Notes under the pieces: model-generated
What the model was told of the DNA's origin: nothing
The model's input: the letters and a program-made list of their open reading frames with translations, nothing else
Databases searched by the model: none
IMG/VR virus record: IMGVR_UViG_3300025162_000016
Location: 248,001 to 312,000 of that record
Reading direction: 5' to 3' (one strand)
DNA: 64,000 nt
Position numbers and translations under genes: made by a program
Shown: positions 31,857-63,770 of the stretch, piece after piece
How positions within the stretch are numbered: the first letter of the stretch is position 1
How the letters are laid out: every line of letters begins with the position of its first letter

Positions 31857-31892
31857 AGTAAAATGCCGGAACAGACCAGCCACTACATCACC
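31857..31892 (+). repeat. Solitary degenerate CRISPR repeat in the 5' UTR of ORF 31903
   Basis: 29/36 identity to the array repeat; begins ~6 nt after TTGACA-17-TAGCAT. Confidence 0.8.
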
Positions 31893-31902
31893 AACATATC
31901 AC

Positions 31903-32241
31903 ATGACTGATCAAGAAATAAACGTTGCAATTGCAACTGTGTGTGGAGAAGAATATCATGAACCTACCGGAGAAGAAATTAAATCTGGTAGTTATTATCA
32001 ATATCAGCCAAACTACACCGGCGACTTAAATGCGATTCATTCTGCATGGTCGCAATTATCCATCGCAAAACAGGTTCTGGCCTGTAGCGAGCTTGAACGC
32101 CTGTGCTATGGCCCTTGCGATACAAAATTGAGGGTCGTCAATGCAAGTGCTCGTCTGAAATCGGAAGCCTTTTTGCGGGCAGAAGGAAAATGGAAGACTA
32201 GTTCAAAAATGACACCCGCTCAGAAAGCTAGCCGAAAGTAA
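31903..32241 (+). CDS. Hypothetical phage protein
   Basis: MTDQEINVAIA...PNYTGDLNA motif common in phage proteins. Confidence 0.65.
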   Translation: MTDQEINVAIATVCGEEYHEPTGEEIKSGSYYQYQPNYTGDLNAIHSAWSQLSIAKQVLACSELERLCYGPCDTKLRVVNASARLKSEAFLRAEGKWKTSSKMTPAQKASRK

Positions 32242-32275
32242 AATCTGAGACTGTGACAGCGAAAGCGACAGGGGC

Positions 32276-32515
32276 GTGGAAATCGCCTGGGTGTCACCAT
32301 TTTTTAAAATTATGAAATTAAATGACCTACCACCATTAGATCAAGCAGAAATCATTGCAAACAGAATTGCCAATATGGATGCTCTACGGGAACACGCCTT
32401 GAAGAGTCGCAATCCAATTGAGTTGATGACGATTGAATTGGATGCACAGGCCAGACTTATGGGACTCAATATGGATTATTGTGAGGAATTAGATGATGAT
32501 GAATATGATCAATAA
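32276..32515 (+). CDS. Hypothetical protein
   Basis: Operonic ORF. Confidence 0.5.
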   Translation: MEIAWVSPFFKIMKLNDLPPLDQAEIIANRIANMDALREHALKSRNPIELMTIELDAQARLMGLNMDYCEELDDDEYDQ

Positions 32516-32517
32516 TA

Positions 32518-32724
32518 ATGACTAAATCACAACTACAAAAACACTTGGGGACCAAGCTAACATTTGAATTAGAAACATTCAGGATGTTATTTACGGACCT
32601 AGATGATAACCAACGTTTGGAATTAATCAAATCCCTTATTTGGACTTCGATTGACGCTCACGCTATGCATAAACGAGTTGTTAACGCAATTTTAAATCCT
32701 TCTTTTGAGAAAACACTTGATTAA
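32518..32724 (+). CDS. Hypothetical protein
   Basis: 5' end duplicated at ~33907-33955. Confidence 0.55.
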   Translation: MTKSQLQKHLGTKLTFELETFRMLFTDLDDNQRLELIKSLIWTSIDAHAMHKRVVNAILNPSFEKTLD

Positions 32725-32774
32725 CTCGGGAGCCAGCAAACCCCTGCCCTAAACATTTTATCTTGGCGGGAGCA

Positions 32775-32809
32775 GAAAACCCATCTGCTTTAGCGGGTGG
32801 GTAGTTCAT
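32775..32809 (+). repeat. Orphan IS605-type right end (TnpB3 family)
   Basis: GAAAACCCATCTGCTTTAGCGGGTGGGTAGTTCAT resembles the TnpB3 right end. Confidence 0.7.
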
Positions 32810-33011
32810 CAATATGAAAATTAGGCACATATATACAGTTATTAGAGAATACGAGATTGGTGCTGATGATCTCAAAGAAGAAATTGACTTTTTCAATGGT
32901 TCTATTATCGATGCATCGGGAGAATTTCTATATTCTGGAACTAGTGGGAAAGAAACAATCACAGTAAAAATGGAAATTGGAGATTAACATCAAAATACAG
33001 TTAAACAAAAT

Positions 33012-33431
33012 ATGACAAAATATAAAAAAATAATATGGGGTTTTGAACCTACTGATGATGTAACTTGTCTGGAACTTCCACAGAGGATTGCTTTTACTTT
33101 CGGTTATAATTGGGAAACGTCTACCATATATTCGAGAATGATTCCAATGGTTATAACTGATAAGAATTTTCGAGTTGGATTTGATCCCAACAGAAAATTA
33201 ATGAATCTGGTTAAGGATTATAAATCCTCGGAATATTTGGTAGTATGGACAGGTGAATTTTTGATTAAAATGTTAAATAATCCTCCGTTGAATCCAATAG
33301 TAATCGAATCTACTGACGGTAAACTATCGGTTCACATTGAATCGGATAATGTGGTTTTTGTGGATAGCGATAAGTCGATTCAAGTTAGTGTTCCAAAGAA
33401 ATTAGTACGGCAGACGGCGGGATTGTGTTAG
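33012..33431 (+). CDS. Hypothetical protein, paralog of ORF 34129
   Basis: Shares KI.W.F.P...QRIAF.FGY.W. Confidence 0.6.
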   Translation: MTKYKKIIWGFEPTDDVTCLELPQRIAFTFGYNWETSTIYSRMIPMVITDKNFRVGFDPNRKLMNLVKDYKSSEYLVVWTGEFLIKMLNNPPLNPIVIESTDGKLSVHIESDNVVFVDSDKSIQVSVPKKLVRQTAGLC

Positions 33432-33469
33432 TGTTCCAAAGAAATTAGTATGGCAGACGGCGGGATTGT
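33384..33469 (+). repeat. 43-bp tandem duplication at the gene end
   Basis: Two copies differing by one base. Confidence 0.9.
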
Positions 33470-33545
33470 TATTAAAATAGAATAAAGACTCCATCGAACG
33501 AAAGATGGGGCTTCTTTTTGTATATAGTTGGATATTTATATCTAT

Positions 33546-33887
33546 ATGATTAAACTTAAAGATATAATATTAGAATTTTTTGATAGATATTGGACATTGG
33601 AAATGGCTAAACCAATAGCCGATAAACTTGGGGCAAAAATAGTTGGTTCTGTTGCTAAATATGGAAAATCAAATCATGATTTAGATCTTAGAGTCGAACA
33701 TAATGACATTTTATCTATAACAAAAATTTTAAATATTTTGGGTTTTGAATCATATGGAAGTGAAGTAGTTTCACCAGAAGAAGCAAAAAAATCCAAAAAT
33801 ATATATGGAAAAGGTTGGCAAAGAGCATATAATTTTATAAATAAAGATGATAAAATAATTCAAATTTGGATGGATCAAAATGATTAA
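33546..33887 (+). CDS. Minimal nucleotidyltransferase-like protein with MIKLKDI N-terminus
   Basis: IVGSVAKYGKSNHDLDL matches hGS-x9-DhD. Confidence 0.6.
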   Translation: MIKLKDIILEFFDRYWTLEMAKPIADKLGAKIVGSVAKYGKSNHDLDLRVEHNDILSITKILNILGFESYGSEVVSPEEAKKSKNIYGKGWQRAYNFINKDDKIIQIWMDQND

Positions 33888-33955
33888 ATTAAAAGATATA
33901 ATAGATATGACCAAATTACAACTACGAAAACACTTGGGGACCAAGCTAACATTTG

Positions 33956-34074
33956 ACAATGTGGAACTTGCGAAATATGGCGTTTGATGTTGACAAATCA
34001 GGGATAATAGAATACATTACCGCTCGCAAATTGATACACGGTTTTTTGATAATACGATAGTTACAATGGATACA
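33956..34074 (+). promoter_or_regulatory. Second copy of the CRISPR leader with promoter
   Basis: Homologous to the reverse complement of ~50345-50463; TTGACA-17-TACATT, CCGCTCGCAAATTGATACAC. Confidence 0.9.
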
Positions 34075-34110
34075 GGTGAAGTGCTGGAACAGATCAGATA
34101 CTATATCACC
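34075..34110 (+). CRISPR. Solitary CRISPR repeat after the duplicated leader
   Basis: 34/36 identity to consensus. Confidence 0.9.
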
Positions 34111-34128
34111 ACCACCCAGAATAAAAAT

Positions 34129-34680
34129 ATGAAAAATATGAAAAATATGAAAAACTACAGGAAAATAGTATGGTCATTCAATCCTTCGATTGACAGCGAA
34201 GTCATTCAGAGGATTGCATTTAGTTTCGGATACGATTGGGAGGACAATGACAGTTATGATGCTCTGACTAAGATAATTTTTTCTGAGGAGAGGATGATGT
34301 TTGATCCTAACACAAAGAAAATCTCGGCGGTTCATTGTAAATATGATTGCACACACACACGTTGGACGTCTAGTCTGCCCCATTTCATGGAATCCCTCAA
34401 AGACCCTCCTGAAATTATTCCAACTGTCTCTTCACCGGCACCGGATACAAAATCGAATCTAAACTTTCCGGTGGTCAGCTTTATGTATCACGACAAGATT
34501 CGTCGGGTTCGGGTTACTAAAATGTATGATAACCACCTGGAAGGGTTTGAAACCTCCTGTGGCGGGAAACCCTACCTAATAGAATCCTACAAGAAATATC
34601 GGATTGATGAGATGGAATCCGATGTTGTCTTGATAAGTTTCGTGCAAGATATTCCCAAAACTATAGATTACGAACCATGA
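34129..34680 (+). CDS. Hypothetical protein between two CRISPR repeats; possible C-terminal WYL-like domain
   Basis: FMYHDKIRRVRV...YKKYRID pattern. Confidence 0.55.
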   Translation: MKNMKNMKNYRKIVWSFNPSIDSEVIQRIAFSFGYDWEDNDSYDALTKIIFSEERMMFDPNTKKISAVHCKYDCTHTRWTSSLPHFMESLKDPPEIIPTVSSPAPDTKSNLNFPVVSFMYHDKIRRVRVTKMYDNHLEGFETSCGGKPYLIESYKKYRIDEMESDVVLISFVQDIPKTIDYEP

Positions 34681-34811
34681 CTAAAGATGAGTTGCAAGAA
34701 ATCCTAATGCAGTGCTGGCATAGGGAAACATCGGTGGATGACGCATTGGACGCCATCTGTGGAGAAACGATGGTCGAGGAAACGCTGTGACTGAATGCAG
34801 ACGAATTGCGT

Positions 34812-34847
34812 GGTGAAGTGCTGGAACAGACCAGCTACTATATCACC
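34812..34847 (+). CRISPR. Solitary CRISPR repeat
   Basis: 35/36 identity to consensus. Confidence 0.9.
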
Positions 34848-38212: not shown

Positions 38213-38217
38213 ATTTT

Positions 38218-38305: not shown

Positions 38306-38312
38306 ATTCATT

Positions 38313-38390: not shown

Positions 38391-38394
38391 ATTT

Positions 38395-39786: not shown

Positions 39787-40006
39787 TATGGTTGGCAAAC
39801 GTGTAAAAGGAACGTGTAGGTATGTAGGAGTAGATAACAAGATATTAGATGCCGATATAAATGCTGCAAATAATATAAGAAACCGTTATCTTCAACTTCC
39901 CTCCAGTATGTGTAAAAACTTAATGGAAGGGCAGGCTATAGTCAAAGAGCCTTATGCTGGAAACTTGTCTGGCAAGCCCCAACCCTTTAGGGTTGTGGGT
40001 AATTGA
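39770..40006 (+). pseudogene. C-terminal remnant of tnpB
   Basis: KGTCRY...ILDADINAANNI matches the TnpB1 C-terminus. Confidence 0.8.
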
Positions 40007-40026
40007 CTCTATTTGATTTTACAGTA

Positions 40027-40100
40027 TGGGCGGCGTCTGATAGCTCTACAACGGGTTGCTCCGTTGAACACTAAATAATGACGAGAATTCCCGCCCACCA
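40027..40100 (+). ncRNA. tRNA-like element (non-canonical)
   Basis: GGGCGG/CCGCCC acceptor plus ACCA and a CAACGG/CCGTTG stem, but no normal T-arm. Confidence 0.35.
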
Positions 40101-40107
40101 ATTTTAT

Positions 40108-40184
40108 AGCAATGTAGCTCAATTTGATAGAGCGTGTCTTTTATAAAGGCTTGGTTGTGGGTTTGAGTCCCACCATTGCTACCA
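40108..40184 (+). tRNA. tRNA-Ile(UAU)
   Basis: Acceptor AGCAATG/CATTGCT, loop TTTATAA, CCA. Confidence 0.85.
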
Positions 40185-47774: not shown

Positions 47775-49112
47775 ATGAACTACCCACCCTCTAAAGAGAG
47801 TGGGTTTCCGTTCCAACCAATTGCCCATTGTTTCCAATAGGTCTTACATCAGGACAAACGGCTAACCCAGTCGTTCCGACTGTTAAATTTAATCCTTGTT
47901 TTAGGATATTCAGAGATGCATTTAAATCTCTATCGTGTTTGTAGTTACATTTTGGACAATTCCACTCTCTATCTTTAAGTGTTAAATCATCTTTAATATA
48001 TCCACAGTTACTACAAGTTTTACTGGATGGGAAGTATCTATCAATTTTAATGACTTTTCTTCCATACCATTCACTTTTATAACATATCTGTCTTACTAAT
48101 TCTGACCAAGAACAATCTCCAATGGATTTAGCATATCTATGATCTCCCATCATATTTTTTACGGACAAATCTTCAAGTATAAGAGTTTGGTTTTCGCTCA
48201 CTAACTTGTGAGATATTTGATGTAAATGATTACTACGAATATTGGCAATTTTAACGTGGAGTTTTCCGAGTTTTAACCTTGCTTTAATTCTCCCGATGGA
48301 TTTTTTCCCAGTCCTACTAACTGATTTCTGTCTAATTCTAACTAATTTTTCTAATTGTTTGAGCGGTTTTATGTTTTTAAATCTAATTCCGTCTGAGCAT
48401 ACTACTAAGGATTTAATTCCCAAATCAATCCCAACAGCATTATTTAATTCTGATTTGATTTCAATGTTTTTAGTAACACCAATACACGCAAAATATTGTC
48501 CTGCTACATTACGACTAATAGTAGCATTTTCAATTGATCCTTCAATTTTACGATGTTGATCGATTTTTATTCCTTCTTTAAATTTGGGAAAATATATTCT
48601 TCCATCTTCTACAGAGACAAATTGTGGTAATCTAAATGATTGTTTACTTCTTCTATTTTTAAATCTTGGATATTTGGATTTTTTCTTAAAGAAACGATTA
48701 AAAGCAGTTTCTAGATGTTTTAAAGAATGTTGGAGTGATTGAGAATTACACTCATTTAACCATTCGGTTTCCGTGTTTGATTTGAGTTTTGTTAACTCTG
48801 CTGACATTTCATTATAATTTAATGATTTTTTAGCAAGTTGTTTTTCTTTTGCATTTAAGTAAAACTTAGTTCGTTTATCTAAAAATAGATTATACACATA
48901 ACGAATACTTCCGAAATGTTTAGACAATAATATCTCTTGTTCCTTTGTAGGATAGATTCTAAATTTATATGTATATTGTCTATTCATTTATACGAAATTT
49001 TGTTTCTCGTATAATACATATCGTTCATTTTCTCAAAACATCAAAATAATTTAAAATATTTTATTGGTCGCCATTCATCCCAAGGTCTAAAGACACTTGG
49101 GTTTTCTGGCGA
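47775..49112 (-). mobile_element. IS200/IS605-family tnpB-only element (TnpB3)
   Basis: Right-end hairpin ending GTAGTTCAT; left-end CCCAAG-GTCTAAAGAC-ACTTGGG hairpin. Confidence 0.8.
47791..48987 (-). CDS. tnpB: RNA-guided endonuclease TnpB (canonical, with Zn finger)
   Basis: YKFRIYPT HTH, GIDLG, LILEDL, SSKTCSNC..CPKC, HDRDLNA. Confidence 0.95.
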   Translation of the reverse strand: MNRQYTYKFRIYPTKEQEILLSKHFGSIRYVYNLFLDKRTKFYLNAKEKQLAKKSLNYNEMSAELTKLKSNTETEWLNECNSQSLQHSLKHLETAFNRFFKKKSKYPRFKNRRSKQSFRLPQFVSVEDGRIYFPKFKEGIKIDQHRKIEGSIENATISRNVAGQYFACIGVTKNIEIKSELNNAVGIDLGIKSLVVCSDGIRFKNIKPLKQLEKLVRIRQKSVSRTGKKSIGRIKARLKLGKLHVKIANIRSNHLHQISHKLVSENQTLILEDLSVKNMMGDHRYAKSIGDCSWSELVRQICYKSEWYGRKVIKIDRYFPSSKTCSNCGYIKDDLTLKDREWNCPKCNYKHDRDLNASLNILKQGLNLTVGTTGLAVCPDVRPIGNNGQLVGTETHSL

Positions 49113-49168: not shown

Positions 49169-49369
49169 ATGACTATTTCAATTAAAACCGCATCTCGTAA
49201 AGATATTCAGCAGTTCCAACGATGGGTTAAGTTACAACCTTGGTCTGAAATATCTTTTCTCCACGAAACTTACCTCCGAGATGATTGCCGTGAAGAAAAA
49301 TTGAAAATTCTCTTCGCCAAATTCTCCGCTCTACCACTAAATCAACGGTTTCCAGCGGGTGATAGGTGA
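49169..49369 (+). CDS. Small hypothetical protein converging on the array trailer
   Basis: TTGACT-17-TACATA promoter; stop codon lies inside the terminal repeat. Confidence 0.45.
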   Translation: MTISIKTASRKDIQQFQRWVKLQPWSEISFLHETYLRDDCREEKLKILFAKFSALPLNQRFPAGDR

Positions 49370-50344
49370 TATAGTGACTGGTCTGTTCCAGCACTTCACC
49401 GGCGAAGCACCTGCTCGGCAAGGACCGCTACCACGAGGTGGTGATATAGTAACTGGTCTGTTCCAGCACTTCACCATTACCGATGTTTCTTTATAGCATA
49501 TACATATAACGGCGGTGATATAGTAACTGGTCTGTTCCAGCACTTCACCTAGGCGACTGAGTTAGGGGCTTTTCCTATATAGCGGTGGTGATATAGTAAC
49601 TGGTCTGTTCCAGCACTTCACCTGAATATGCATTGCCTCTGGTGCAACAATTCGGATAGGTGATATAGTAACTGGTCTGTTCCAGCACTTCACCCAGATA
49701 GAAGATGATAAACCGGATTCTCTACTGATGGTGATATAGTAACTGGTCTGTTCCAGCACTTCACCTTGAAAGGATACCATAGGAAGGATATGTATTACTC
49801 ATGGTGATATAGTAACTGGTCTGTTCCAGCACTTCACCTAGAGTTTGCTTTTGATGAAAGCCAATATGCTGCGGGTGATATAGTAACTGGTCTGTTCCAG
49901 CACTTCACCTCTTTTTTTATTGCTCTATGAGCAGAGACTTGGCTCTGGTGATATAGTAACTGGTCTGTTCCAGCACTTCACCTCTTTTTTTATTGCTCTA
50001 TGAGCAGAGACTTGGCTCTGGTGATATAGTAACTGGTCTGTTCCAGCACTTCACCGTAGAGTTCAGCACTTGGAATATCCATTACTATGATAGGTGATAT
50101 AGTAACTGGTCTGTTCCAGCACTTCACCCATATTTTCCAGTTGGTTCGGGCAAATCAATCGTGGGTGATATAGTAACTGGTCTGTTCCAGCACTTCACCT
50201 TCTTTACTCCATTCCCAGAAGGCTAATGCGAGCGGTGGTGATATAGTAACTGGTCTGTTCCAGCACTTCACCAAATGCAAGTTATCACTATATTTCGCCA
50301 ACTCGAACGGTGATATAGTAACTGGTCTGTTCCAGCACTTCACC
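49365..50344 (-). CRISPR. CRISPR array: 14 repeats (36 nt, GGTGAAGTGCTGGAACAGACCAGTTACTATATCACC as transcribed), 13 spacers of 35-39 nt
   Basis: Read directly; variant trailer repeat at 49365; spacers 49910-49946 and 49983-50019 identical. Confidence 0.99.
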
Positions 50345-50465
50345 TGTATCCCTCGTAAGTAACGTATTATCAAAGAACTGTGTATCAATTTGCGAGCGGC
50401 AGTGTATTCTATTATCCCCGGTTTGTCAACATCAAATATCATATTTCGTAAGTTCCATATTATCA
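50345..50465 (-). promoter_or_regulatory. CRISPR leader with sigma70 promoter
   Basis: Minus-strand TTGACA-17-TACACT; CCGCTCGCAA motif recurs at ~50390, ~50480 and inverted at ~50514. Confidence 0.85.
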
Positions 50466-50523
50466 GCGAGTTACAAGTTGCGAGCGGCTACGGCATATTT
50501 GACGCCACCTAACCGCTCGCAAA

Positions 50524-52800
50524 TTAACATAAAAGTCCCAGCTCAATATCATAATTAATATGATAGTTATTCAATGCCCACATTGTAATTGGGTCATCGG
50601 CATCGTCCCGAATTTTCTCTAGCGGTTCAATAATTCCGGCATTAAGTAATCGTTGGTGTACATTTCCAAATACCGTTACCGAATTTCTGCTAATATCCGC
50701 ATATCCGAGGGTAATATCTTTAGATTTAATTCTTTCAATGACAGTCGGATCGATTACAACTGTAAATTTTTGAGTTTTTATCAATCGCATTAAATTACCT
50801 ACGGTGCGGAGATTTCCCTTGGAAAAGTTATCTTCAATCCGAGAAATCATATTCCAATTGCTAGTTGTTAACGTGTCTCTCGCTGCCGATGTTCCCATTG
50901 CCGGAATCCATTCATTTTTTTCTAATTTACGAAATACATTAATCGCTCTTTGTGTCGTAGGATTAATAGTTATTGTTCCCTTTCGGATTAATGATTCAGA
51001 AAAACAAAAAACATATACTTTTCCGATTTTAAATTCATTATTCCTATTACATCTTCCGGTGCATTGTTGAAGTGAATCTAAACTGGTTTCTTCTCGATAA
51101 CACCGCTCAAATGATATATCAATACCACATTCTACCATTGAGGTGGCAATTAATATGACCGGTAATTCATCTTTTATTTTTTGTTTTATTAATTCCAATC
51201 TTTTTTCTCTAAACTCCGGTGTCACTCGACTACTCAAATGATAGACATTCCCATTTCCGCTATTCAATAATTTAAATAAAACCTTCGCATTATTAGTGGT
51301 ATTACATACTATTAAAGTAGAATGTTTGTTTTTATATCCATTAGTTATATGCCGACATAATTTACCTAATCCAATAGCTCCCAGATGCGATTTTTTAACC
51401 CGTGTATTTTCTCTCGCCTGAAAATGCTTCCATTCCGTATGTGTAAGCATATTATCCACTACTATATTTTTATGATATAAATCCCAAAAATCAATGGGAG
51501 TCCCGGAACTAAAAATAACGTGAACATTATAATTGTTTACTAATTTTTCTAATAAAAATAACGCATGTGACCATAATTCATATGGCATCGCTTGATGATA
51601 CTCATCAAGAACAATGACCGAATCCGTAAAATGAATGAGTTTCCCTATCGCTGCGGGATGATAAGTAGTCAATGCCTCGAAAAATTGCACGCAAGTAGTA
51701 TACGTTAATGGACCATCTAATCTATTATTATATTTTCGCAACCGCCAATCTGTAAACTGAACCATAGAATGATGCTCGTTAATAACCCCTACCTGATACT
51801 CTCCCGGTAACAAAAGAGATTCTTTTGCTTTACCAACAAGTTGATTGATAACATTAATATATGGGGCCACAATAAATATTCGTTCACACCCATATTTTTT
51901 TGCCATTTTCAATGCCTTTTTATGATTAGCATTGGTTTTACCCGAACCTACCGTACCATCGTTTTTTATCCAAGATGAGATAGATTCCCTATCCGCCGAC
52001 GCATAAAGAAGCTTCCGATCTTTAATTCTTTTACCGGGATTTATTTTACTTAATCCATCATTATATTTATCAAAATTTTCAATACGCTCATCCTCTCGAA
52101 GTTTATATGGCTCAGGTAGCACATATCCATCATTACGAAATTGATTGGTGTCGGCGTGATCAGCAGACACCATGCAGGAAAAACACTCTGATATATCATG
52201 CCAATCAACATTTTTAATATTAATGTTATACCCAACATCCGGCATTGAATCCGTAATAATTATATCTTCTTTATGTAGTTGTTCCCATATAATAAGATTA
52301 GCATCTACATAATCTCTTATACGATAATCCCGCCATTTTTCTTTAAGATGTATTTTGGTCGGCGATAACATTTGTGACGGATTAACAAGAGTAATTTTAG
52401 TTAATTCTTCCCAATCTATATAACCAATATGATGAGCCAATATCAGCCACGCTGCTAAAAGATAATATAATTCATTGGTTCGTTCATATTCCTTAATACA
52501 ATGCGATACTCCTGCATCAACATGGTTAAGCATTGACGTATCGCTTTCGCTTGATTGTGAAAGAATTGCTTGACATTCCGGCATCAATTTTCCCAAATCA
52601 TGCCATTCTGTAGCAGTTTCAAGTATTTTCCGATAGAAATTTACCATTTTTCTATTCTTATAATGACGAAATCTACGATCAAACTCCCGCAAGGCGTTAT
52701 TACGTACCGCATGAATGTGATCCCGATATAATTGCGGAGCAACTGTACGGTTCGATGCGTTCACCTGATAACCGGAATGGGCAAAATTTTCTGTCAGCAT
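50524..52800 (-). CDS. cas3: Cas3 helicase-nuclease (HD + SF2)
   Basis: DH, WHDLGK, NH..AG, AHH, SADH; GSGKT, APYINVINQ, DEYH, SGT, NT, ATSMVECGID, QCTGRCNR. Confidence 0.93.
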   Translation of the reverse strand: MLTENFAHSGYQVNASNRTVAPQLYRDHIHAVRNNALREFDRRFRHYKNRKMVNFYRKILETATEWHDLGKLMPECQAILSQSSESDTSMLNHVDAGVSHCIKEYERTNELYYLLAAWLILAHHIGYIDWEELTKITLVNPSQMLSPTKIHLKEKWRDYRIRDYVDANLIIWEQLHKEDIIITDSMPDVGYNINIKNVDWHDISECFSCMVSADHADTNQFRNDGYVLPEPYKLREDERIENFDKYNDGLSKINPGKRIKDRKLLYASADRESISSWIKNDGTVGSGKTNANHKKALKMAKKYGCERIFIVAPYINVINQLVGKAKESLLLPGEYQVGVINEHHSMVQFTDWRLRKYNNRLDGPLTYTTCVQFFEALTTYHPAAIGKLIHFTDSVIVLDEYHQAMPYELWSHALFLLEKLVNNYNVHVIFSSGTPIDFWDLYHKNIVVDNMLTHTEWKHFQARENTRVKKSHLGAIGLGKLCRHITNGYKNKHSTLIVCNTTNNAKVLFKLLNSGNGNVYHLSSRVTPEFREKRLELIKQKIKDELPVILIATSMVECGIDISFERCYREETSLDSLQQCTGRCNRNNEFKIGKVYVFCFSESLIRKGTITINPTTQRAINVFRKLEKNEWIPAMGTSAARDTLTTSNWNMISRIEDNFSKGNLRTVGNLMRLIKTQKFTVVIDPTVIERIKSKDITLGYADISRNSVTVFGNVHQRLLNAGIIEPLEKIRDDADDPITMWALNNYHINYDIELGLLC

Positions 52801-52916
52801 TTTTTAGCTTAACTTTTTTCCTCCGCAAAGTCAATATTTTATTCGGTTTTTTGGATCAATCGATTTTCCCTAAAATAAATCTTGCTTTTTTTCGACAATA
52901 GTGTTAGGTTAACACC
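52801..52916. promoter_or_regulatory. Back-to-back sigma70 promoters for cas3 and cas12, both (near-)leaderless
   Basis: Plus TTGCTT-17-TAGGTT, 6 nt before the ATG; minus TTGACT-17-TAAGCT, 5 nt before the ATG. Confidence 0.75.
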
Positions 52917-55900
52917 ATGACAAAAGAAAAAATCAAAAAAACCAAAAAGGCAAAAGTAGAAAAAGACTCCGTAACACGGGCGGGTATTTTGCGGATATTG
53001 TTGAATCCAGATCAACATCAAGAACTCGATACTCTCATCTCTGACCACCAAGAGGCTGCTAGAGAAATTCAGACTGCGACATATAAATTATCTGGACTAA
53101 AGCTATATGACAAAACCAACAACATGGTGGTCGATGGTAGCAAAGCAACCCCCGAAGAACAAGAGGCTTATTATAAAATAATTAATTGGGAAGGTCAGCC
53201 AATTTCAATTTCCAATCCAATGGTGCGGGCTACATTTAAAAGTATAGCGAAAGTCAAAGAAGATATTCGTCGAAAACAGGAAGAGTATGCTAAGCTTGAA
53301 GAAGCGGATTTGACAAAAATGTCAACCGGTGATGTAAAAAAACATAAAAATGAACTTAGAAAAGCAGCAAACAGAATTAAACATTCTGAAGAGATTCTTC
53401 AGTTTGCCAAATGGCGACTTGCCGACATTTTTCCGCTCCCTCTATCGCACAACTCTCAGTTACATCTTAAAAATAACTATCACCAAAATGTATTCAGTGG
53501 ATTCCATGCACGAGTTAAAGGATGGAACGCATGTGATATTGCGGCTCAAGCAAATTATGCTGAGATAGATAACCGATTAACGGAGTTGTCTTCGGAATTA
53601 TCCGGTGATTATGGGAGCGAAGTTATAACCGATTTGATGGGCTTGTTACAATACACTAAAGAACTAGGAGAAGGATACACGGATACTTCTTATTTGAATT
53701 ATAAATTTTTATCGTTTTTTAAGGAATGCTGGCGACCCAATGCAATTGCTAATAACACCGGATTGCTAGAAGGATTTTGGCTGGCAAATAATAAACACAC
53801 CAATAAAAAAAATCAAGTTGCTTATTCTTTCAATCCAAAAATTAGTGAAGAATTGTTCCGACGAAGAAGTTTATGGGAATCTGATAAATGCCTTTTGTCT
53901 GATCCAAGATTTGAAAAATATGTTGAATTATTTGATAAACATGGTCGTTATCGTAAAGGAGCTTCCCTTACTTTAATTTCAAAAGAATCTCCCATTCCAA
54001 TCGGTTTCTCAATGGATCGCAATGCGGCTAAATTAGTCCGTATAGATAATGATACCGCCAATCGTCAATTAACCATTACTATCGAACTTCCCAATAAAGA
54101 AGAACGTTCTTATGTAGCTGCGTATGGACGTAAACATGAAACTAAATGTTATTATAATGGGCTTACAACAAGATTACCTCGTAGTGAGAAGGAGTTGCTT
54201 GCATTAGCCAAAGCAGAAAATCGTGAACTCACGGACAAAGAAATACATGAGGCATCACTTGAAAAGTGTTATATTTTTGAATATGCCCGAGCCGGTAAAA
54301 TACCGGTGTTTGCTGTCGTAAAAACATTATATTTTCGACGCAACCCGTCTAATGGTGAATATTATGTTATTCTTCCAACTAATATTTTTGTTGAATATCA
54401 CGCCAATAATGAATTCAATTCCAAGGAATTATTCAAAATTAGATCGGAGCTCCAAAAGGCATGGGATGAAGTTCGCACGCCTAAACGTAATGTTCAAAGC
54501 TGTGTTTTGGATAAAGACCTAAGTAAACGTTTTGCCGGTAGAACTTTGAAATATGCGGGAATAGACCTTGGATATAGTAATCCATATACGGTTAGTTATT
54601 ATAACGTGGTGGGAACAGAAGAAGGTATTCAAATCAAAGAAACGGGAAATGAAATTGTTTCTACGGTTTTTAATGAACAGTATATTCAACTCAAAGGGAA
54701 TATATACCAACTTATAAATATCATTCGTGCCTCCCGTCGATACTTACAAGAGAGCGGTGAATTAAAGCTAAGTAAAGATGATATTAAAAGTTTTGATCAA
54801 CTCATGGAGTTACTCCCATCCGAACAACGAATTACTATCGATCAATTCATTAAAGATATTAAAAAAGCAAAACAAGAGGGAAAGTTAATACGAGACATTA
54901 AAGGAAAACTCCCGGTTGAAGGGAAAAAGAAAGAATATTGGGTTATCAGTAATTTAATGTATGTTATTACTCAAACAATGAATGGTATTCGGGGAAATAG
55001 AGATTCTAATAATCATCTCACCGAGAAGAAAAATTGGTTGTCGGCTCCCCCATTAATTGAATTGATTGATGCTTATTATAATCTTAAAAAAACATTCAAT
55101 GATTCCGGTGATGGAATTAAAATGCTTCCTAAAGATCATGTATATGCCGAAGGAGAAAAACAACGGTGTACTCTAAGAGAAGAAAACTTCTGTAAAGGTA
55201 TTTTAGAGTGGCGGGATAATGTTAAAGATTATTTCATTAAAAAATTATTCTCCCAAATCGCTCACCGCTGTTACGAATTAGGAATCGGTATCGTAGCAAT
55301 GGAGAATCTTGATATAATGGGATCATCTAAAAATACTAAACAAAGTAATCGTATGTTTAATATCTGGCCCAGAGGACAAATGAAAAAATCTGCCGAAGAT
55401 GCGTTTAGTTATATGGGTATATTAATCCAATATGTCGATGAAAATGGAACCAGTCGCCATGATGCCGATTCCGGTATTTATGGTTGTCGTGATGGTGCAA
55501 ATCTATGGCTACCTAATAAAAAATTGCACGCCGATGTAAACGCCTCTCGAATGATCGCTCTACGAGGACTTACTCATCATACTAATCTGTATTGTAGAAG
55601 TTTAACCGAAATAGAAAATGGAAAGTACGTTAATACATATGAATTGTTCGATACCACAAAAAATGACCAAAGTGGAGCGGCAAAACGACTCCGTGGAGCA
55701 GAAACTCTTCTACATGGTTATTCCGCTACCGTATACCAAATCCATACCACAAACACCGGTGCCGGTGTTGCCTTACTACCTGACTTAACTGCAACCGATG
55801 TCATTAAAAATAAAAAAATCACCGCCACAAAAGAAAATACAGCCAAATATTATAAATTAGATAATACTAATACCTACTACCCATGGAGTGTATGTGAAAA

Positions 55901-55928
55901 ACTTCACAAAAATTGGAAACTATCATAA
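52917..55928 (+). CDS. cas12: Class 2 type V effector (Cas12h/Cas12b-like), 1003 aa
   Basis: RuvC-I GIDLG, RuvC-II VAMENL, GTS..D..SG..G.R, RuvC-III HADVNA..IALRGL.H; adjacent array. Confidence 0.88.
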   Translation: MTKEKIKKTKKAKVEKDSVTRAGILRILLNPDQHQELDTLISDHQEAAREIQTATYKLSGLKLYDKTNNMVVDGSKATPEEQEAYYKIINWEGQPISISNPMVRATFKSIAKVKEDIRRKQEEYAKLEEADLTKMSTGDVKKHKNELRKAANRIKHSEEILQFAKWRLADIFPLPLSHNSQLHLKNNYHQNVFSGFHARVKGWNACDIAAQANYAEIDNRLTELSSELSGDYGSEVITDLMGLLQYTKELGEGYTDTSYLNYKFLSFFKECWRPNAIANNTGLLEGFWLANNKHTNKKNQVAYSFNPKISEELFRRRSLWESDKCLLSDPRFEKYVELFDKHGRYRKGASLTLISKESPIPIGFSMDRNAAKLVRIDNDTANRQLTITIELPNKEERSYVAAYGRKHETKCYYNGLTTRLPRSEKELLALAKAENRELTDKEIHEASLEKCYIFEYARAGKIPVFAVVKTLYFRRNPSNGEYYVILPTNIFVEYHANNEFNSKELFKIRSELQKAWDEVRTPKRNVQSCVLDKDLSKRFAGRTLKYAGIDLGYSNPYTVSYYNVVGTEEGIQIKETGNEIVSTVFNEQYIQLKGNIYQLINIIRASRRYLQESGELKLSKDDIKSFDQLMELLPSEQRITIDQFIKDIKKAKQEGKLIRDIKGKLPVEGKKKEYWVISNLMYVITQTMNGIRGNRDSNNHLTEKKNWLSAPPLIELIDAYYNLKKTFNDSGDGIKMLPKDHVYAEGEKQRCTLREENFCKGILEWRDNVKDYFIKKLFSQIAHRCYELGIGIVAMENLDIMGSSKNTKQSNRMFNIWPRGQMKKSAEDAFSYMGILIQYVDENGTSRHDADSGIYGCRDGANLWLPNKKLHADVNASRMIALRGLTHHTNLYCRSLTEIENGKYVNTYELFDTTKNDQSGAAKRLRGAETLLHGYSATVYQIHTTNTGAGVALLPDLTATDVIKNKKITATKENTAKYYKLDNTNTYYPWSVCEKLHKNWKLS

Positions 55929-55929: not shown

Positions 55930-56390
55930 CGCCAAATGTTGTAACATATCAGTTATTATATCACCGGCGAACTGTGAACTCTCGCAGAAACAAAAGAAAT
56001 GCTTTCTGCTTGACTTTTTCAAAAATATCGGTATCATACCAATATGAATGAATCATTGGTATGTGGACGGTTAACCGCCCATAAAAAACCTTGTCAAAAT
56101 TAACCCGTTTTTTATATTATATATATATAAAAACATATCTACGTATTCTTAAAGGTGAAGTGCTGGAACAGACCAGTTACTATATCACCGATATAATATC
56201 GGTAACATACCAATATGAATACAAAAACAGATATGAAACAATATGATACCGAAACCCTGTCCCCTCTCATCTATATAGTAAAAAAAATATCCTTACCTAC
56301 ATAAAGATATATCTACATATTCAAAATATAAAAACATATCTACGTATTCTTAAAGGTGAAGTGCTGGAACATATCAGTTACTATACCACC
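55930..56390 (+). CRISPR. Three widely spaced repeat copies after cas12 (55930-55965 degenerate, 56154-56189 perfect, 56355-56390 3 mismatches)
   Basis: Direct comparison with consensus. Confidence 0.8.
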
Positions 56391-57240
56391 CTATATCCCC
56401 CCCCTCCCCCCCCATATCACCAAAAAATAAAATATACCCTTATTCCTTTTTATATTCTATACCCTTCCCCCATCGCTATATGCTATTTTATAAAAACTAA
56501 ATATCTACAATATTAGTAGATTATAGGGTGTATATACGTATATACACGCCTTTTTTATACTATATTAATGTATTTCACCAATAATTTACAAAAATATATC
56601 CATAAATACGTATAAAGAATTATGGCGATAATAGTTTATAAAGCTTATAACGGCAGTGGTTTATATAACATAATATATTGCCGATATATCCTATATTAAT
56701 GATTTTATAAATAATTATAAAAGGATAGGCTGGCGACAAAAAGTTTCATTTAAAACGGGTATTTCACCAATTTATTTTTATAAAAATAAATATTAACTCT
56801 AAGAATGGTATTTCACCAATTTATTTTATAAAAATAATTATTAATTCTAAAAATGGTATTTCACCAATTTATTTTTATAAAATAAATATTAACTCTAAGA
56901 ATGGGTATTTCACCAATTTATTTTTATAAAATAAATATTAACTCTAAGAATGGGTATTTCACCAATTTATTTTTATAAAATAATTAATAACTCTAAGGTT
57001 AGAGTTATTTTTTTTTTTAATAAATCTAAGGTTAGAATTAATCGGTGAAAATACCACTTGACGGGATAACTCTAAGGTTAGAGTTAATGAGAGGAATAAA
57101 TCTAAGGTTAGAGTTGATCGGGATATGGGTATAGTTGTACGTACTGGGAGGGAGAGAGGGAGGGAGGGGAGAGAGCGGGATATTTGGATTGGAAAGATTG
57201 CGGAAAGAATAGCTTGCTTTTTTACGAGGGAGTAGTAAGA
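56390..57240. other. Putative replication origin
   Basis: Gene-free and very AT-rich; C-tract at ~56390-56415 vs G-tract at ~57145-57180; iterons and palindromes. Confidence 0.6.
56757..56997. repeat. Five ~49-bp iteron-like tandem repeats
   Basis: GGTATTTCACCAATTTATTTTTATAAAATAAATATTAACTCTAAGAAT at ~56758, 56807, 56855, 56904, 56953. Confidence 0.92.
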
Positions 57241-57532: not shown

Positions 57533-58561
57533 ATGGCGCATCGCATCTTTGAGTATGACAGGCAGCAGGGTAAGGAGCAAGCATGGCACGGTAAGACGGT
57601 AATCACGCCGGATTTGACATTGGACAACAATTGGTTGCGGGAATGGGATTTGGTTCCTCGCAAGATTGCGGATTTGGAAAATAACGAAGAATTGCCTTGG
57701 GTGTATCTGCGTTGTTCGGATAATTCGGTTATTCGTGTTGGCCAGCCATATAATCCGGCGACTTTTCAGCCGGTGAACAATGCGGATTTCTTGGATATGA
57801 TTAAGGCCAGCATATCGGGCACACCGCATACGGTGAGTTCAGTAGGTTCCTTGCGCAATCGGGGCCGGGTATTTGTGAGCATTGAATTGATGGGAATGGA
57901 GAAATTCAAGGCGGCGGGCCGGGATTTTGGTGCATTCCTGAATTTCGGTAATGGACATGATAAGTCTTCGGTACTTTGGGTCAATACCAGCAACATTTGT
58001 ACGGTTTGCGACAATACGTTTTCGTGCAATCTGGTATCTGTAGAAAATAAGGTGACTAAGACGGATGATGATAACGTCCGAATCAGCCAGCGGCATACTA
58101 AGAATGTTAAATTGCGGTTGCCGGACATTGCTTCAATGGTAGATAAGGCTATTAGGGTACAGGCGGAATTCAAGCTGGAAATGGACAAGCTAGCTGCAAT
58201 AGCCGTAAGCCGAAACGGAGTTACCCAGCTCTTTGCTGGGTTCATTGGGCGCAATGTATCGGATAAAGCCAAGGGGTTATCAACTAGGGCGGTCAACACG
58301 GTTGCCAAGTTGGATGATTTGTTTGTCAATGGGCGGGGAAACAGGGGTGAAACGTTGGCCGATGCGTTTTCAGCTACCACGGACTTTTACACTCACTTTT
58401 CTTCTGGCGGTGAAAATGTGATGCGACAAATGGTATCGAGCGATTATGGGTCTGGTCAAGCCAACAAAGCAGAATTCTGGAATCTGGTTAGGAATGGGGA
58501 ATTGCGGGAAACAACCAGAGCACGGGGCGAAGAATTGTTAGTGAATACTGCTAAAGATTAG
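57533..58561 (+). CDS. DUF932-family phage/plasmid protein
   Basis: MAH...AWHGK, Y.P..N, GSL..G..VF, N.HD.S, VC.NT. Confidence 0.85.
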   Translation: MAHRIFEYDRQQGKEQAWHGKTVITPDLTLDNNWLREWDLVPRKIADLENNEELPWVYLRCSDNSVIRVGQPYNPATFQPVNNADFLDMIKASISGTPHTVSSVGSLRNRGRVFVSIELMGMEKFKAAGRDFGAFLNFGNGHDKSSVLWVNTSNICTVCDNTFSCNLVSVENKVTKTDDDNVRISQRHTKNVKLRLPDIASMVDKAIRVQAEFKLEMDKLAAIAVSRNGVTQLFAGFIGRNVSDKAKGLSTRAVNTVAKLDDLFVNGRGNRGETLADAFSATTDFYTHFSSGGENVMRQMVSSDYGSGQANKAEFWNLVRNGELRETTRARGEELLVNTAKD

Positions 58562-59082: not shown

Positions 59083-59198
59083 AGTGAAGTGCTGGAACAG
59101 ACCAGACACTATATCACTAAAAAATGAAACTTTGTAGTTGATAATTTTGAATAAACCGGTATAATTTATTTAGTGAAGTGCTGGAACAGACCAGACAC
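59083..59198 (+). repeat. Two solitary repeat copies (59083-59118 full; 59172-59198 partial)
   Basis: 32/36 identity with compensatory AGTGA/TCACT ends. Confidence 0.85.
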
Positions 59199-59294
59199 AA
59201 TAAGACGTAAGACGAAACAAGTAATCATTGACAAAATAAAAAATATCGGTATAGTTAGTAAAGTTAAGCGATTAAACAAATAAAACAATAAAAA

Positions 59295-61894: not shown

Positions 61895-62120
61895 AGTGAA
61901 GTGCTGGAACAGACCAGTTACTATATCACTTTATGTTGTTATCTTTTTTAAATTTATCCCTTGTGAATAAATCTAAGGTTAGAGTTAAAATAACTTGCAT
62001 GTTTCGGGGATAAGTGCTATATATGATAGACAGTGAAGTGCTGGAACAGACCAGTCACTAAAACACTGGGAATATGTGCTACTGTATGCGATAATGAAGT
62101 GCTGGAACAAACCGACATTG
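61895..62120 (+). repeat. Three repeat copies (61895-61930, 62032-62067, partial 62093-62120), the first two behind TTGCAT...TATATA promoter-like units
   Basis: 34/36 and 31/36 identity to consensus. Confidence 0.88.
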
Positions 62121-63189: not shown

Positions 63190-63388
63190 AGTGAATTACT
63201 GGAACAGACCAGTCACTATCAACTCTAAGATTAGAATTAAAACGAATTGCATTTTTTTGAAATTTCTAGTGAATTACTGGAACAGACCAGTCACTAAAAC
63301 ACTACCGGAGAAGGAGTAATAATTTTTTATCACCCTTCTCCGGCATATATGTAGTGACGTGCTGGGATATATCAGTCACTAAAACACT
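63190..63388 (+). repeat. Degenerate three-repeat mini-array (63190, 63268, 63353)
   Basis: CTGGAACAGACCAGTCACT core; gaps of 42 and 49 nt, the second a CCGGAGAAGG/CCTTCTCCGG hairpin. Confidence 0.8.
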
Positions 63389-63644
63389 CAGACTGTACGG
63401 TAAAGGTATCAGCACTTTCCCAACTAAAATGATCTACGATTGCTTTACCGGCAGCATCATCTTGATCAAATGCCAATTTGGGTTCAAAATCCGCTTGTTC
63501 CGCTTTATTCATAGCAAATTTATAATGATACCCATTATCGTAATCATCTTCGGTACAGATTAATTTACAAAAGTAAAAGTCTGGTTCTCCATTACTGTTA
63601 ATCCCGGCTACCATCATCTTTAAGTCAAGCATAAAGTCAAGCAT
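63372..63644 (-). CDS. Hypothetical protein
   Basis: Stop overlaps the repeat copy at 63353. Confidence 0.55.
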   Translation of the reverse strand: MLDFMLDLKMMVAGINSNGEPDFYFCKLICTEDDYDNGYHYKFAMNKAEQADFEPKLAFDQDDAAGKAIVDHFSWESADTFTVQSECFSD

Positions 63645-63734
63645 ATTTTTGTTTTTAATCGGTTAATTGTTTTTTTACTGTGATATGATTATACGGATTT
63701 ACGGATAGGAGTCAACTAATAAATGTATATATTT

Positions 63735-63770
63735 AGTGACGTGCTGGAACAGACCAGTCTCTATATCTCT
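63735..63770 (+). repeat. Solitary degenerate CRISPR repeat
   Basis: 30/36 identity to consensus. Confidence 0.85.

What the first reader, a model, noticed from the sequence alone, without database searches (positions are those of the whole stretch)
52917..55928. Divergent 1003-aa Cas12 of the V-H/V-B neighbourhood, possibly a new subtype
Seen: the C-terminal run GTSRHDADSGIYGCR...HADVNASRMIALRGLTH...Y follows the pattern I recall from Cas12h (GTS..SG..G.R...D...I..RGL.H) and more loosely Cas12b. The N-terminal half is not recognisable to me. The repeat folds into one long hairpin (GGUGA/UCACC, AGUG/UACU, CUGG/CCAG), and no convincing tracrRNA was found. Inference: tracr-independent, self-processing effector with unknown PAM.
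Basis: partly seen in the sequence, partly recalled or inferred. Interest (0 to 1): 0.72.

Follow-up and report, generated by a model that had tools for sequence, protein, structure and literature searches.

The report
Huge-phage Cas12 paired with Cas3
The 1003-residue gene is a real CRISPR Cas12 nuclease, carried by a complete 369-kb freshwater phage and always found next to a Cas3 helicase-nuclease, so it looks like a hybrid of single-protein and Cas3-type CRISPR systems that has been noted by computation but never tested.

Summary
The ORF, the C-terminal motif and the hairpin repeat are all as described. P0001 is a Cas12. Its RuvC residues D550, E796 and D873 are invariant in the family. 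The AF2 model (pLDDT 84) matches Cas12o1/Cas12X (Z 24-25), Cas12h1 (Z 22) and Cas12b (Z 16-18) over its full length, at only 11-18% identity. The V-H/V-B placement therefore holds, with V-O slightly closer.

The divergent neighbour at 50524-52800 is a type I-C-like Cas3 with intact HD and helicase motifs. All 12 related cas12 loci with enough flank have an adjacent Cas3, down to about 21% Cas12 identity. Cas12 and Cas3 identities track each other (r 0.99).

The window is identical to part of a complete 368,758-bp phage genome with terminal repeats. That genome has four arrays of this repeat (36 spacers). Searches found no Cas1, Cas4, Cas5 or Cas7.

Best reading: crRNA-guided Cas12 opens or nicks the target and Cas3 then degrades it. 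This step is inferred.

A Cas3-linked "Cas12h variant" was reported in 2023, so this is a new member of a known, uncharacterised kind.

Nineteen solo copies of the repeat lie scattered through the phage genome and remain unexplained.

The parts
52917..55928 (+). cas12 (P0001, 1003 aa), in the supergroup of Cas12o1/Cas12X, Cas12h and Cas12b. RuvC-I D550 (GIDLG), RuvC-II E796 (AMENL), RuvC-III D873 (HADVNAS).
   Evidence: The catalytic triad is invariant in alignments A1 and A2. AF2 model pLDDT 83.9. Foldseek and VIA-align give full-length matches to Cas12o1/X, Cas12h1 and Cas12b. Profile hits in PDB.
50524..52800 (-). cas3 (758 aa), an HD nuclease fused to an SF2 helicase, type I-C-like, transcribed divergently from cas12.
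   Evidence: PADLOC Cas3c E 1e-88; Pfam Cas3-like_C_2, Helicase_C and DEAD; NCBIfam cas3_core and cas3_HD. HD, Walker A, DExH and motif VI residues are invariant in 12 homologues. Nearest solved chains are two Cas3 entries, 8zns and 8g9u_P.
52801..52916 (.). 116-bp AT-rich intergenic region between the divergent cas3 and cas12 starts. It is the presumed site of their promoters.
   Evidence: Sequence read. No repeat copy lies in it. Promoter function is inferred only.
49365..50344 (-). CRISPR array B: 14 repeats of 36 nt and 13 spacers (35-39 nt; spacers 5 and 6 are identical). crRNA sense is on the - strand, downstream of cas3.
   Evidence: The one degenerate repeat is at the 49365 end.
50345..50540 (-). 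Array leader of 196 nt. It is 92-96% identical upstream of all four arrays of the phage and contains TTGACA-17 nt-TACACT.
55930..55965 (+). Degenerate repeat copy (9 mismatches) that starts 2 nt after the cas12 stop codon.
56154..56189 (+). Exact solo copy of the repeat, in cas12 sense, 226 nt after cas12.
56355..56390 (+). Solo repeat copy (3 mismatches) with the same 24-nt upstream flank as the 56154 copy.
59083..59207 (+). Two solo repeat copies (59083-59118 and 59172-59207) in an intergenic region. The second begins 7 nt after an 11/12 sigma-70 consensus site.
61895..62067 (+). Two solo repeat copies (61895-61930 and 62032-62067) of the AGTGA...TCACT variant, which keeps the terminal base pair. 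They share a similar upstream flank of about 35 nt.
63190..63770 (+). Four degenerate solo copies (63190, 63268, 63353, 63735), all intergenic.
31857..34847 (+). Three solo copies (31857, 34075, 34812). The 34075 copy is preceded by a partial copy of the array leader (leader positions 76-196, 87% identity).

Best explanation
This is the effector gene of a phage-borne type V CRISPR-Cas system that works as a two-protein module with Cas3 and has no adaptation genes. The phage transcribes four arrays that share one leader and one 36-nt hairpin repeat. Cas12 binds the repeat hairpin as the 5' handle of each crRNA, probably without a tracrRNA. It then finds a PAM-flanked DNA target and forms an R-loop. 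Its intact RuvC site probably nicks the displaced non-target strand, as its relative Cas12h1 does. The neighbouring Cas3, which has no Cascade to work with in this genome, loads on that single-stranded or nicked DNA and degrades the target processively. The targets are most likely competing phages or other mobile DNA in the same host.

Shown: Cas12 identity and fold; the intact RuvC, HD and helicase motifs; the strict Cas12-Cas3 linkage and co-divergence; no Cas1, Cas4, Cas5 or Cas7 detected in the complete genome; and the repeat hairpin with covariation.

Inferred: physical recruitment of Cas3, the order of events, nicking as opposed to double-strand cleavage, tracr-independence, and the nature of the targets.
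For: Cas12 identity: the RuvC triad is invariant in 7 close and 28 wider homologues. The structure matches Cas12o1/X (Z 24-25), Cas12h1 (Z 22) and Cas12b (Z 16-18) over residues 14-1003.

Cas3 linkage: a Cas3 gene is adjacent in all 12 Cas12-anchored loci with enough flank. These are the window, L001/L002, L003, the P0005 contig, L004, L005, L006, L030, L028, L036 and L039, plus L035 reached from the Cas3 side. The pairs come in two gene orders, divergent and co-directional, and Cas12 identity falls to about 21%.

Co-divergence: pairwise Cas12 and Cas3 identities correlate at r 0.99, Mantel p 2e-4.

Cas3 activity: the catalytic motifs are invariant.

No other partner: the complete 368,758-bp phage gave no match to the Cas1, Cas4, Cas5d or Cas7 models, and the controls responded.

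Arrays: all four carry the same repeat and leader.

Literature: Cas12h1 preferentially nicks the non-target strand (PMC11830025). Cas12o1 is a crRNA-only DNA nuclease with a 36-nt repeat (PMC13717751). A Cas12h variant with an active Cas3 was noted (PMC10691335). A Cas12 from a 'Cas12-Cas3' system co-purified with crRNA (PMC10910872).
Against: There is no direct evidence that the two proteins touch. The one complex prediction that fitted the size limit gave no answer. No protospacer was found for any spacer tested, so the target type and PAM are unknown. One related phage contig (L033) has cas3 and two arrays but no cas12 within 6 kb upstream or 10 kb downstream, so adjacency is not absolute. 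An intact RuvC triad does not prove DNA cleavage, since the updated classification counts V-C and V-M among DNA-binding, non-cleaving subtypes (PMC12669027); that Cas12c and Cas12m keep the triad is from my own knowledge. Co-divergence of two genes on one genome also follows from plain co-inheritance. No RNA data could be listed.
Confidence: 0.6

Rival explanations
1. Cas12 is only the RNA-guided DNA binder and pre-crRNA processor, a single-protein stand-in for Cascade. Cas3 does all the DNA cutting, including the first nick.
For: This is how the 2023 Science paper read its Cas12-Cas3 system: a Cas12m not known to cleave DNA, with Cas3 providing interference (PMC10910872). DNA-binding, non-cleaving type V effectors exist (V-C and V-M; PMC12669027). 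In type I systems the Cas3 HD domain makes the first nick itself (established knowledge).
Against: The nearest characterised relatives, Cas12o1 and Cas12h1, do cut DNA. The PNAS paper predicts an active Cas12 in the Cas3-linked Cas12h variant. The Cas12m structure is a poor match (Foldseek TM 0.18). R858, in the conserved GxR motif of the domain beside RuvC, is invariant in the 7 close homologues and at least 90% conserved in the 28.
Confidence: 0.2
2. Cas12 is a self-sufficient nuclease. The neighbouring Cas3 is a leftover of a lost type I-C system, or serves phage replication or recombination, and has no functional link to Cas12.
For: Cas3 is most similar to type I-C Cas3 models. In L033 cas3 and its arrays occur without an adjacent cas12.
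Against: The pair is kept in 12 of 12 loci across deep divergence and in two gene orders, and all Cas3 catalytic motifs are preserved. A remnant would decay or be lost. No Cascade gene was detected in the complete genome. In every case where an array is seen it carries this hairpin repeat and lies beside cas3 or cas12.
Confidence: 0.08
3. The system needs a tracr-like RNA. Some of the solo repeat copies, for example those just downstream of cas12, are transcribed antisense and pair with the pre-crRNA repeats.
For: Three repeat copies lie in the ORF-free 1.6 kb after cas12, a typical position for a tracrRNA gene. Cas12b, a structural relative, is tracr-dependent (established knowledge). Weak promoter-like sites (9/12) exist on the - strand at 56353-56325 and 56270-56243.
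Against: Covariation supports a hairpin within the repeat, which is the pattern of tracr-independent effectors. The closest relatives, Cas12o1 and Cas12h1, use crRNA alone. All 19 solo copies are in the sense orientation on the main coding strand (349 of 460 ORFs). A perfect 36-nt anti-repeat is not typical of tracrRNAs.
Confidence: 0.07
4. The module's main job is not defence against competitors. It may control the phage's own or the host's gene expression or DNA, through the dispersed repeat copies acting as fixed single-guide units or as Cas12 binding and processing sites in phage transcripts.
For: There are 19 solo repeats, all in sense orientation and mostly intergenic. The terminal base pair co-varies, two copies carry leader fragments, and one sits 7 nt after a strong promoter-like site. 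Repeat copies beside cas12 recur in L003, L006 and L036. No spacer target was found.
Against: The four ordinary arrays hold 33 different spacers of canonical length, as expected for interference against foreign DNA. No spacer matches the phage itself. A processive shredder such as Cas3 is poorly suited to regulation.
Confidence: 0.1

Closest known systems
Cas3-associated 'Cas12h variant' (Altae-Tran et al. 2023, PNAS, PMC10691335) and the 'Cas12-Cas3' candidate system (Altae-Tran et al. 2023, Science, PMC10910872)
   Same: A Cas12h-like effector of about 900-1000 aa without an adaptation module, next to a type I-C-like Cas3 with intact HD and helicase domains. Cas12 is predicted to be catalytically active. 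The system is rare, with only a handful of loci in metagenomes.
   Different: I could not retrieve the published sequences, so identity with those loci is untested. Sample identifiers do not overlap. The signature genes listed in the Science supplement are 686-743 codons and are called 'Cas12m', whereas this family is about 900-1040 aa and does not resemble Cas12m. Neither paper, as far as I could read them, describes the complete huge-phage setting, the four arrays or the dispersed solo repeats.
Cas12o1 / Cas12X / Cas12-2 (PDB 8xca, 8wru, 8zqb, 8zqh)
   Same: Best structural match: Z 24-25 over residues 17-1003 against 1-894. It has a 36-nt repeat, a crRNA-only guide, no zinc-ribbon cysteines in the domain beside RuvC, and the same C-terminal motif pattern.
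   Different: Identity is only 16-17%. With P0001 alone, only the RuvC C-terminal part aligns (E 3e-7). Cas12o1 is 908 aa and is described as a stand-alone editor with an ATG PAM. Whether its native locus has a Cas3 could not be checked because the paper is not held.
Cas12h1 (type V-H; PDB 8y9l, 8y9n)
   Same: Full-length structural match (Z 22). Its preference for nicking the non-target strand suggests how a Cas3 partner could be useful.
   Different: Identity is 14%. Cas12h1 is 870 aa against 1003 aa here. With the close-family profile the match is marginal (E 0.011). No Cas3 occurs in the text of the Cas12h1 paper searched (0 occurrences).
Type I-C CRISPR-Cas (Cascade plus Cas3)
   Same: The Cas3 is most like I-C Cas3 models. 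The expected outcome is processive degradation starting from an R-loop.
   Different: No Cas5, Cas7 or Cas8c was detected in the complete phage genome (the Cas8c control was silent). The repeat is a 36-nt full hairpin. The R-loop former would be a single class 2 protein.
Cas12b (type V-B)
   Same: Same overall architecture (Z 16-18) and a related C-terminal motif.
   Different: Cas12b is tracrRNA-dependent, about 1100 aa and usually comes with cas1, cas2 and cas4 (established knowledge). None of these genes was found here.

Membership tests
Type V effector (Cas12) | Split RuvC-like nuclease domain with the D-E-D triad | tested here: met
   D550, E796 and D873 are invariant in A1 and (D873 at least 90%) in A2. 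The RuvC region matches TnpB and Cas12 profiles.
Type V effector (Cas12) | Bilobed Cas12 fold (WED, REC, RuvC and the domain beside RuvC) | tested here: met
   AF2 model pLDDT 83.9, pTM 0.76. Full-length matches to solved Cas12 structures, Z up to 25.
Type V effector (Cas12) | Genomic association with a CRISPR array | tested here: met
   Array at 49365-50344 and three more arrays with the same repeat in the phage. Related loci carry co-varying repeats.
Type V effector (Cas12) | crRNA-guided nucleic-acid targeting | not testable with these tools
   No RNA run was listed and no protospacers were found.
Cas3-linked Cas12h-like variant (PMC10691335) | cas3 encoded next to cas12 | tested here: met
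   Found in 12 of 12 Cas12-anchored loci.
Cas3-linked Cas12h-like variant (PMC10691335) | Cas3 with intact HD and helicase motifs, and Cas12 predicted active | tested here: met
   Invariant motifs in A3. RuvC triad conserved.
Cas3-linked Cas12h-like variant (PMC10691335) | Loss of the adaptation module | tested here: met
   No Cas1 or Cas4 match in the complete 368,758-bp genome, with responsive controls. Cas2 was not searched.
Cas3-linked Cas12h-like variant (PMC10691335) | Sequence membership in the published clade | not testable with these tools
   The published sequences are not retrievable here. Only contig names and coordinates were read.
Subtype V-H (Cas12h) | Specific sequence relationship to Cas12h1 | tested here: inconclusive
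   E 0.011 with the close-family profile and 9e-26 with the wider profile. 14% identity in the structural alignment, with Cas12o1/X scoring higher.
Subtype V-O as used for Cas12o1 in PDB and PMC13717751 | Specific sequence relationship to Cas12o1 | tested here: inconclusive
   It is the best match of all (E 7e-60 with A2; Z 24-25), but identity is 16-17% and P0001 alone aligns only over the RuvC part. The repeat length of 36 nt is the same.
Subtype V-M (Cas12m) | Small (about 600 aa) Cas12m fold | tested here: not met
   The protein is 1003 aa. Cas12m 8pm4 gives Foldseek TM 0.18 and Cas12m4a only E 3e-7 over RuvC.
Type I-C CRISPR-Cas | Cascade genes cas5, cas7 and cas8c alongside cas3 | tested here: not met
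   No PF09704 or PF05107 match in the complete genome, with working controls. PF09709 also gave no match, but its control was silent.

The most novel reading that the evidence does not exclude
The phage has spread its CRISPR repeat through its own regulatory regions as 19 solo copies. The terminal base pair co-varies among them, and some carry leader fragments or sit beside promoter-like sites. If so, the Cas12 of a Cas12-Cas3 hybrid would double as an RNA-binding or RNA-processing factor for phage transcripts, or would be armed by dispersed single-guide units. Cas3 would meanwhile be recruited by a class 2 effector to shred targets. Either function would be a new way for a virus to use CRISPR parts.
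Probability: 0.2. Interest if true: 0.85.

Novelty: new member of a known kind. Interest (0 to 1): 0.62.

Why it matters
Class 1 and class 2 CRISPR systems are treated as separate designs. In one, Cas3 is recruited by the multi-subunit Cascade. In the other, a single protein does everything. A conserved Cas12-Cas3 pair in a genome without Cascade suggests that a single-protein effector can hand a target to Cas3. That idea has been raised from genome data but, in the papers I could search, never tested.

This locus is a good test case. It sits in a complete natural genome with its native arrays, leader and both genes, so nothing has to be guessed when the system is rebuilt. If it works as proposed, it could give a compact tool for long-range deletions, with one guide protein plus Cas3. 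It would also show how huge phages fight competitors without acquiring spacers themselves.

The dispersed repeats raise a separate question: does a phage use its own CRISPR repeat as a regulatory element?

Tried and rejected
1. Pfam, PADLOC and PHROGs gave nothing for P0001.

2. Megablast of 24 kb of the window against GenBank phages and PLSDB plasmids found no match.

3. Spacer targets were not found. There are no self-matches in the 369-kb genome. Arrays B, C and D have no convincing hits in GenBank phages. Exact 28-30-nt searches of spacers D1 and B1 in IMG/VR hit only the array itself, and spacer B13 had no hit in 185,579 species genomes.

4. No family member was found in the species genomes. 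A metagenome scan returned only loci already known. The wide alignment A2 was too diverse to search with.

5. No RNA sequencing run could be listed.

6. Complex prediction of full Cas3 with Cas12 residues 60-301 gave no answer (score 0.00). The 1000-residue limit prevents a full-length test. This result counts neither for nor against binding.

7. The Cas12o1 discovery paper and the Tordoff 2025 paper are not held. No paper on 'Cas12X' was found.

8. I first thought that every solo repeat follows a promoter. The promoter scan supports this clearly for only one copy (59172) and for the array leader, so I dropped the general claim.

9. Cas12i, known from huge phages, was considered and rejected. 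It ranks well below the top matches (Z 14) and was not hit by either family profile.

10. The record behind L033 could not be searched for a distant cas12.
Full report
**The observation**

The ORF at 52917-55928 (+) is open from an ATG for 1003 codons.

A CRISPR array of 14 repeats of 36 nt lies at 49365-50344. The repeat folds into a single hairpin that pairs its own two ends (-13 kcal/mol, z -2.9). I aligned 20 distinct versions of the repeat from this phage and from three related loci. Nine of the 13 base pairs change on both sides while staying paired. Pairing is 89.6% against 77% in shuffles, with 0 of 500 shuffles as good, and it collapses when the partners are slid. The hairpin is therefore real and under selection.

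The degenerate terminal repeat marks the far end of each array. This places the crRNA sense of the window's array on the - strand, downstream of the neighbouring gene and not of cas12.

**What the protein is**

Pfam, PADLOC and PHROGs find nothing. NCBIfam sees only a weak TnpB-like C-terminus.

The family is very rare. Seven proteins were found among 5.8 billion clusters, and 68 distant hits among 1.8 billion representatives. Within it, D550 (GIDLG), E796 (AMENL) and D873 (HADVNAS), the three RuvC motifs, are invariant.

An AlphaFold2 model built on 28 homologues is confident (pLDDT 83.9, pTM 0.76). It superimposes over its whole length as follows:

| Solved structure | Z |
|---|---|
| Cas12X / Cas12o1 / Cas12-2 | 24-25 |
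| Cas12h1 | 22 |
| Cas12X2 | 20 |
| Cas12b | 16-18 |
| Cas12f | about 15 |
| Cas12i | about 14 |
| Cas12g | about 13 |

Cas12m is a poor match (Foldseek TM 0.18). Sequence identity to all of these is 11-18%.

A profile of the wider family gives E-values of 7e-60 for Cas12o1/X, 9e-26 for Cas12h1 and 4e-20 for Cas12b. The close-family profile reaches Cas12h1 only at E 0.011.

The protein is a distinct lineage within that supergroup.

The gene at 50524-52800 (-) starts 116 bp from cas12 and is transcribed divergently. It is a Cas3 (PADLOC Cas3c E 1e-88; HD and helicase domains). Across 12 homologues the following are invariant:

- the HD motifs H8, H67-D68, H93/D95, H123-H124 and D214-H215;
- Walker A (G285, G287, K288);
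- DExH (D399-E400);
- motif VI (Q579, G582, R583, R586).

Its nearest solved relatives are two Cas3 chains, 8zns and 8g9u_P.

**How strong the link is**

Every related cas12 locus with enough flanking DNA has a Cas3 gene beside it.

- P0003, P0004, P0005, P0006 and P0007 (45-58% identity) have it in the divergent order, as does P0009 (37%).
- P0008 (24%), P0012 (28%) and P0015 (31%) have it directly upstream on the same strand. In P0015's locus it is split into an upstream 244-aa ORF, presumably the HD part, and a helicase gene.
- A virus contig, L039, has a 936-aa Cas12 (21.5% identity) in the divergent order.

I also started from the Cas3 side. The next tier of Cas3 relatives (34% identity) is followed by a gene that matches the Cas12 family profile at 99.5% probability. 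Pairwise identities of the Cas12s and of their Cas3s correlate at r 0.99 (Mantel p 2e-4). This fits a two-gene module inherited together since the base of the clade, although co-inheritance alone would give the same result.

There is one exception. Contig L033 carries a 67%-identical Cas3 and two arrays but no cas12 within the 6 kb upstream or 10 kb downstream that could be read.

**Genomic setting**

The window is 100% identical to positions 248001-312000 of IMGVR_UViG_3300025162_000016. This is a 368,758-bp virus genome with direct terminal repeats of about 7.1 kb, rated 100% complete. It has 35.8% G+C and 7 tRNAs. The phage is found in lake and freshwater metagenomes from two studies.

The genome holds four arrays with the same repeat, 40 repeats and 36 spacers in all, of which 33 are unique. 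Each array is preceded by the same 196-nt leader at 92-96% identity. It gave no match to the Cas1, Cas4, Cas5d or Cas7 models, and the controls responded. A Cas8c search was also empty, but its control was silent. The Cas3 therefore has no Cascade to serve, and the phage cannot acquire spacers with the known machinery.

Several relatives also sit on large phage-like contigs: L036 at 168 kb with Thg1, EF-Ts, DHFR and ThyA genes, L033 at 107 kb with rIIB, and L039 at 60 kb. No member was found in 185,579 species genomes.

**Mechanism**

What is shown: an apparently active Cas12, an apparently active Cas3, strict linkage between them, arrays with a selected hairpin repeat, and no other Cas partner.

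What I infer: Cas12 loads crRNAs whose 5' handle is the repeat hairpin, recognises a PAM and forms an R-loop, and Cas3 then acts on the displaced strand.

Two facts from relatives shape the details. Cas12o1 is a crRNA-only DNA endonuclease with a 36-nt repeat (PMC13717751). Cas12h1 cuts the non-target strand about 13 nt from the PAM and hardly touches the target strand (PMC11830025). A nick there would leave a 3' flap on the PAM-proximal side. Cas3 translocates 3' to 5' (established knowledge from type I systems), so that flap would be a suitable entry point.

The main rival is that Cas12 only binds and Cas3 also makes the first nick. The 2023 Science paper proposed this for its 'Cas12m'-Cas3 system.

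A complex prediction limited to Cas3 plus Cas12 residues 60-301 gave no answer and is not evidence either way. Targets and PAM are unknown because no protospacer was found in the phage itself, GenBank phages, IMG/VR or the species genomes.

**Tracr question**

Several points favour a crRNA-only system. The covariation is intramolecular, and the two closest characterised relatives use crRNA alone. Rfam finds nothing but tRNAs. This remains untested. The solo repeats described below would be perfect anti-repeats if they were transcribed antisense.

**Comparison with the literature**

Only one paper in the searched library uses the term 'Cas12-Cas3'. It describes a candidate class 1-2 hybrid with 7 loci, a type I-C-like Cas3 and a Cas12 that co-purified with crRNA (PMC10910872).

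A companion paper states that a Cas12h variant of about 900 aa lost its adaptation module and gained a Cas3 with active HD and helicase domains, with Cas12 predicted to be active (PMC10691335). That description fits this locus on every point I could test.

I could not fetch those sequences. Sample identifiers differ, and the Science supplement lists signature genes of 686-743 codons, shorter than this family. The main text of the 2025 classification update does not mention Cas12h, V-H or a Cas3-linked type V system.

I found no experimental study of interference by such a system in the library. I therefore file this as a new member of a known but uncharacterised kind.

**Dispersed repeats**

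Besides the arrays, the phage has 19 solo copies of the repeat. Fourteen are in the window: 31857, 34075, 34812, 55930, 56154, 56355, 59083, 59172, 61895, 62032, 63190, 63268, 63353 and 63735.

All are in crRNA sense on the + strand, and 15 of the 19 are intergenic by a crude ORF map. Several read AGTGA...TCACT where the array repeat reads GGTGA...TCACC, which keeps the terminal pair. Two carry part of the array leader. One begins 2 nt after the cas12 stop codon, and one begins 7 nt after an 11/12 sigma-70 consensus.

Repeat copies or two-repeat mini-arrays next to cas12 recur in L003, L006 and L036. I could not test what they do. The candidates are listed in the notebook and in the rival explanations.

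**Verdict**

- Interest: 0.62. The Cas3 pairing on a complete huge-phage genome makes the open question of a class 2 effector working with Cas3 directly testable, but the pairing itself has been reported.
- Novelty: new member of a known kind.

Noticed in passing
window 31857-63770 (14 sites); G001 12987, 229885, 314770, 330454, 350540: Nineteen solo copies of the CRISPR repeat lie outside the arrays. All are in crRNA sense on the + strand and most are intergenic. The terminal base pair co-varies (AGTGA...TCACT), and two copies carry partial copies of the array leader.
   Followed up: partly
window 47791-48987 (-): An IS605-family TnpB gene (HTH_OrfB_IS605, OrfB_IS605 and TNB domains) lies about 380 bp beyond the far end of the array. 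In the related locus L001, a resolvase and TnpB fragments sit where the array would be, leaving a single orphan repeat after cas3.
   Followed up: partly
window 49910-50019; G001 333100-333729: Some spacers are duplicated within arrays. Spacers B5 and B6 are identical. D1/D8 and D2/D9 repeat as a block, which points to internal duplication and not to new acquisition.
   Followed up: no
window 56757-56997: A 49-bp tandem repeat of 4.9 copies (93% matches) contains TTTCACCAAT. The same motif recurs twice just after the solo repeat at 66770 in the genome. It may be an iteron-like protein-binding array.
   Followed up: no
window 56396-56413: Two runs of eight C separated by a T lie directly after the solo repeat at 56355, in the ORF-free stretch after cas12.
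   Followed up: no
window 38137-40181: A cluster of five tRNA genes by Rfam. Aragorn finds seven tRNAs in the whole phage genome.
   Followed up: partly
L003 5028-5137: A two-repeat, one-spacer mini-array in cas12 sense lies immediately upstream of cas12 and overlaps the annotated start. The called 1035-aa product probably starts at a later Met.
   Followed up: no
L033 8677-9368 and 12606-12860: A related phage contig has cas3 followed by two arrays. Their repeats differ by compensatory changes in the inner stem (CTCG...CGAG against CTGG...CCAG). No cas12 lies within the fetched flanks.
   Followed up: partly
window 46318-47022 (-), 57533-58561 (+), 59833-60642 (+): Neighbouring genes match a ParB C-terminal domain (phrog_2579), DUF932/TIGR03299 phage-plasmid-like protein, and GP88. 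This fits a phage genome.
   Followed up: no
window 12601-12726 and 28813-28937; G001 328728-328849: A 126-nt segment is present three times in the phage genome at about 97% identity. Its function is unknown.
   Followed up: no
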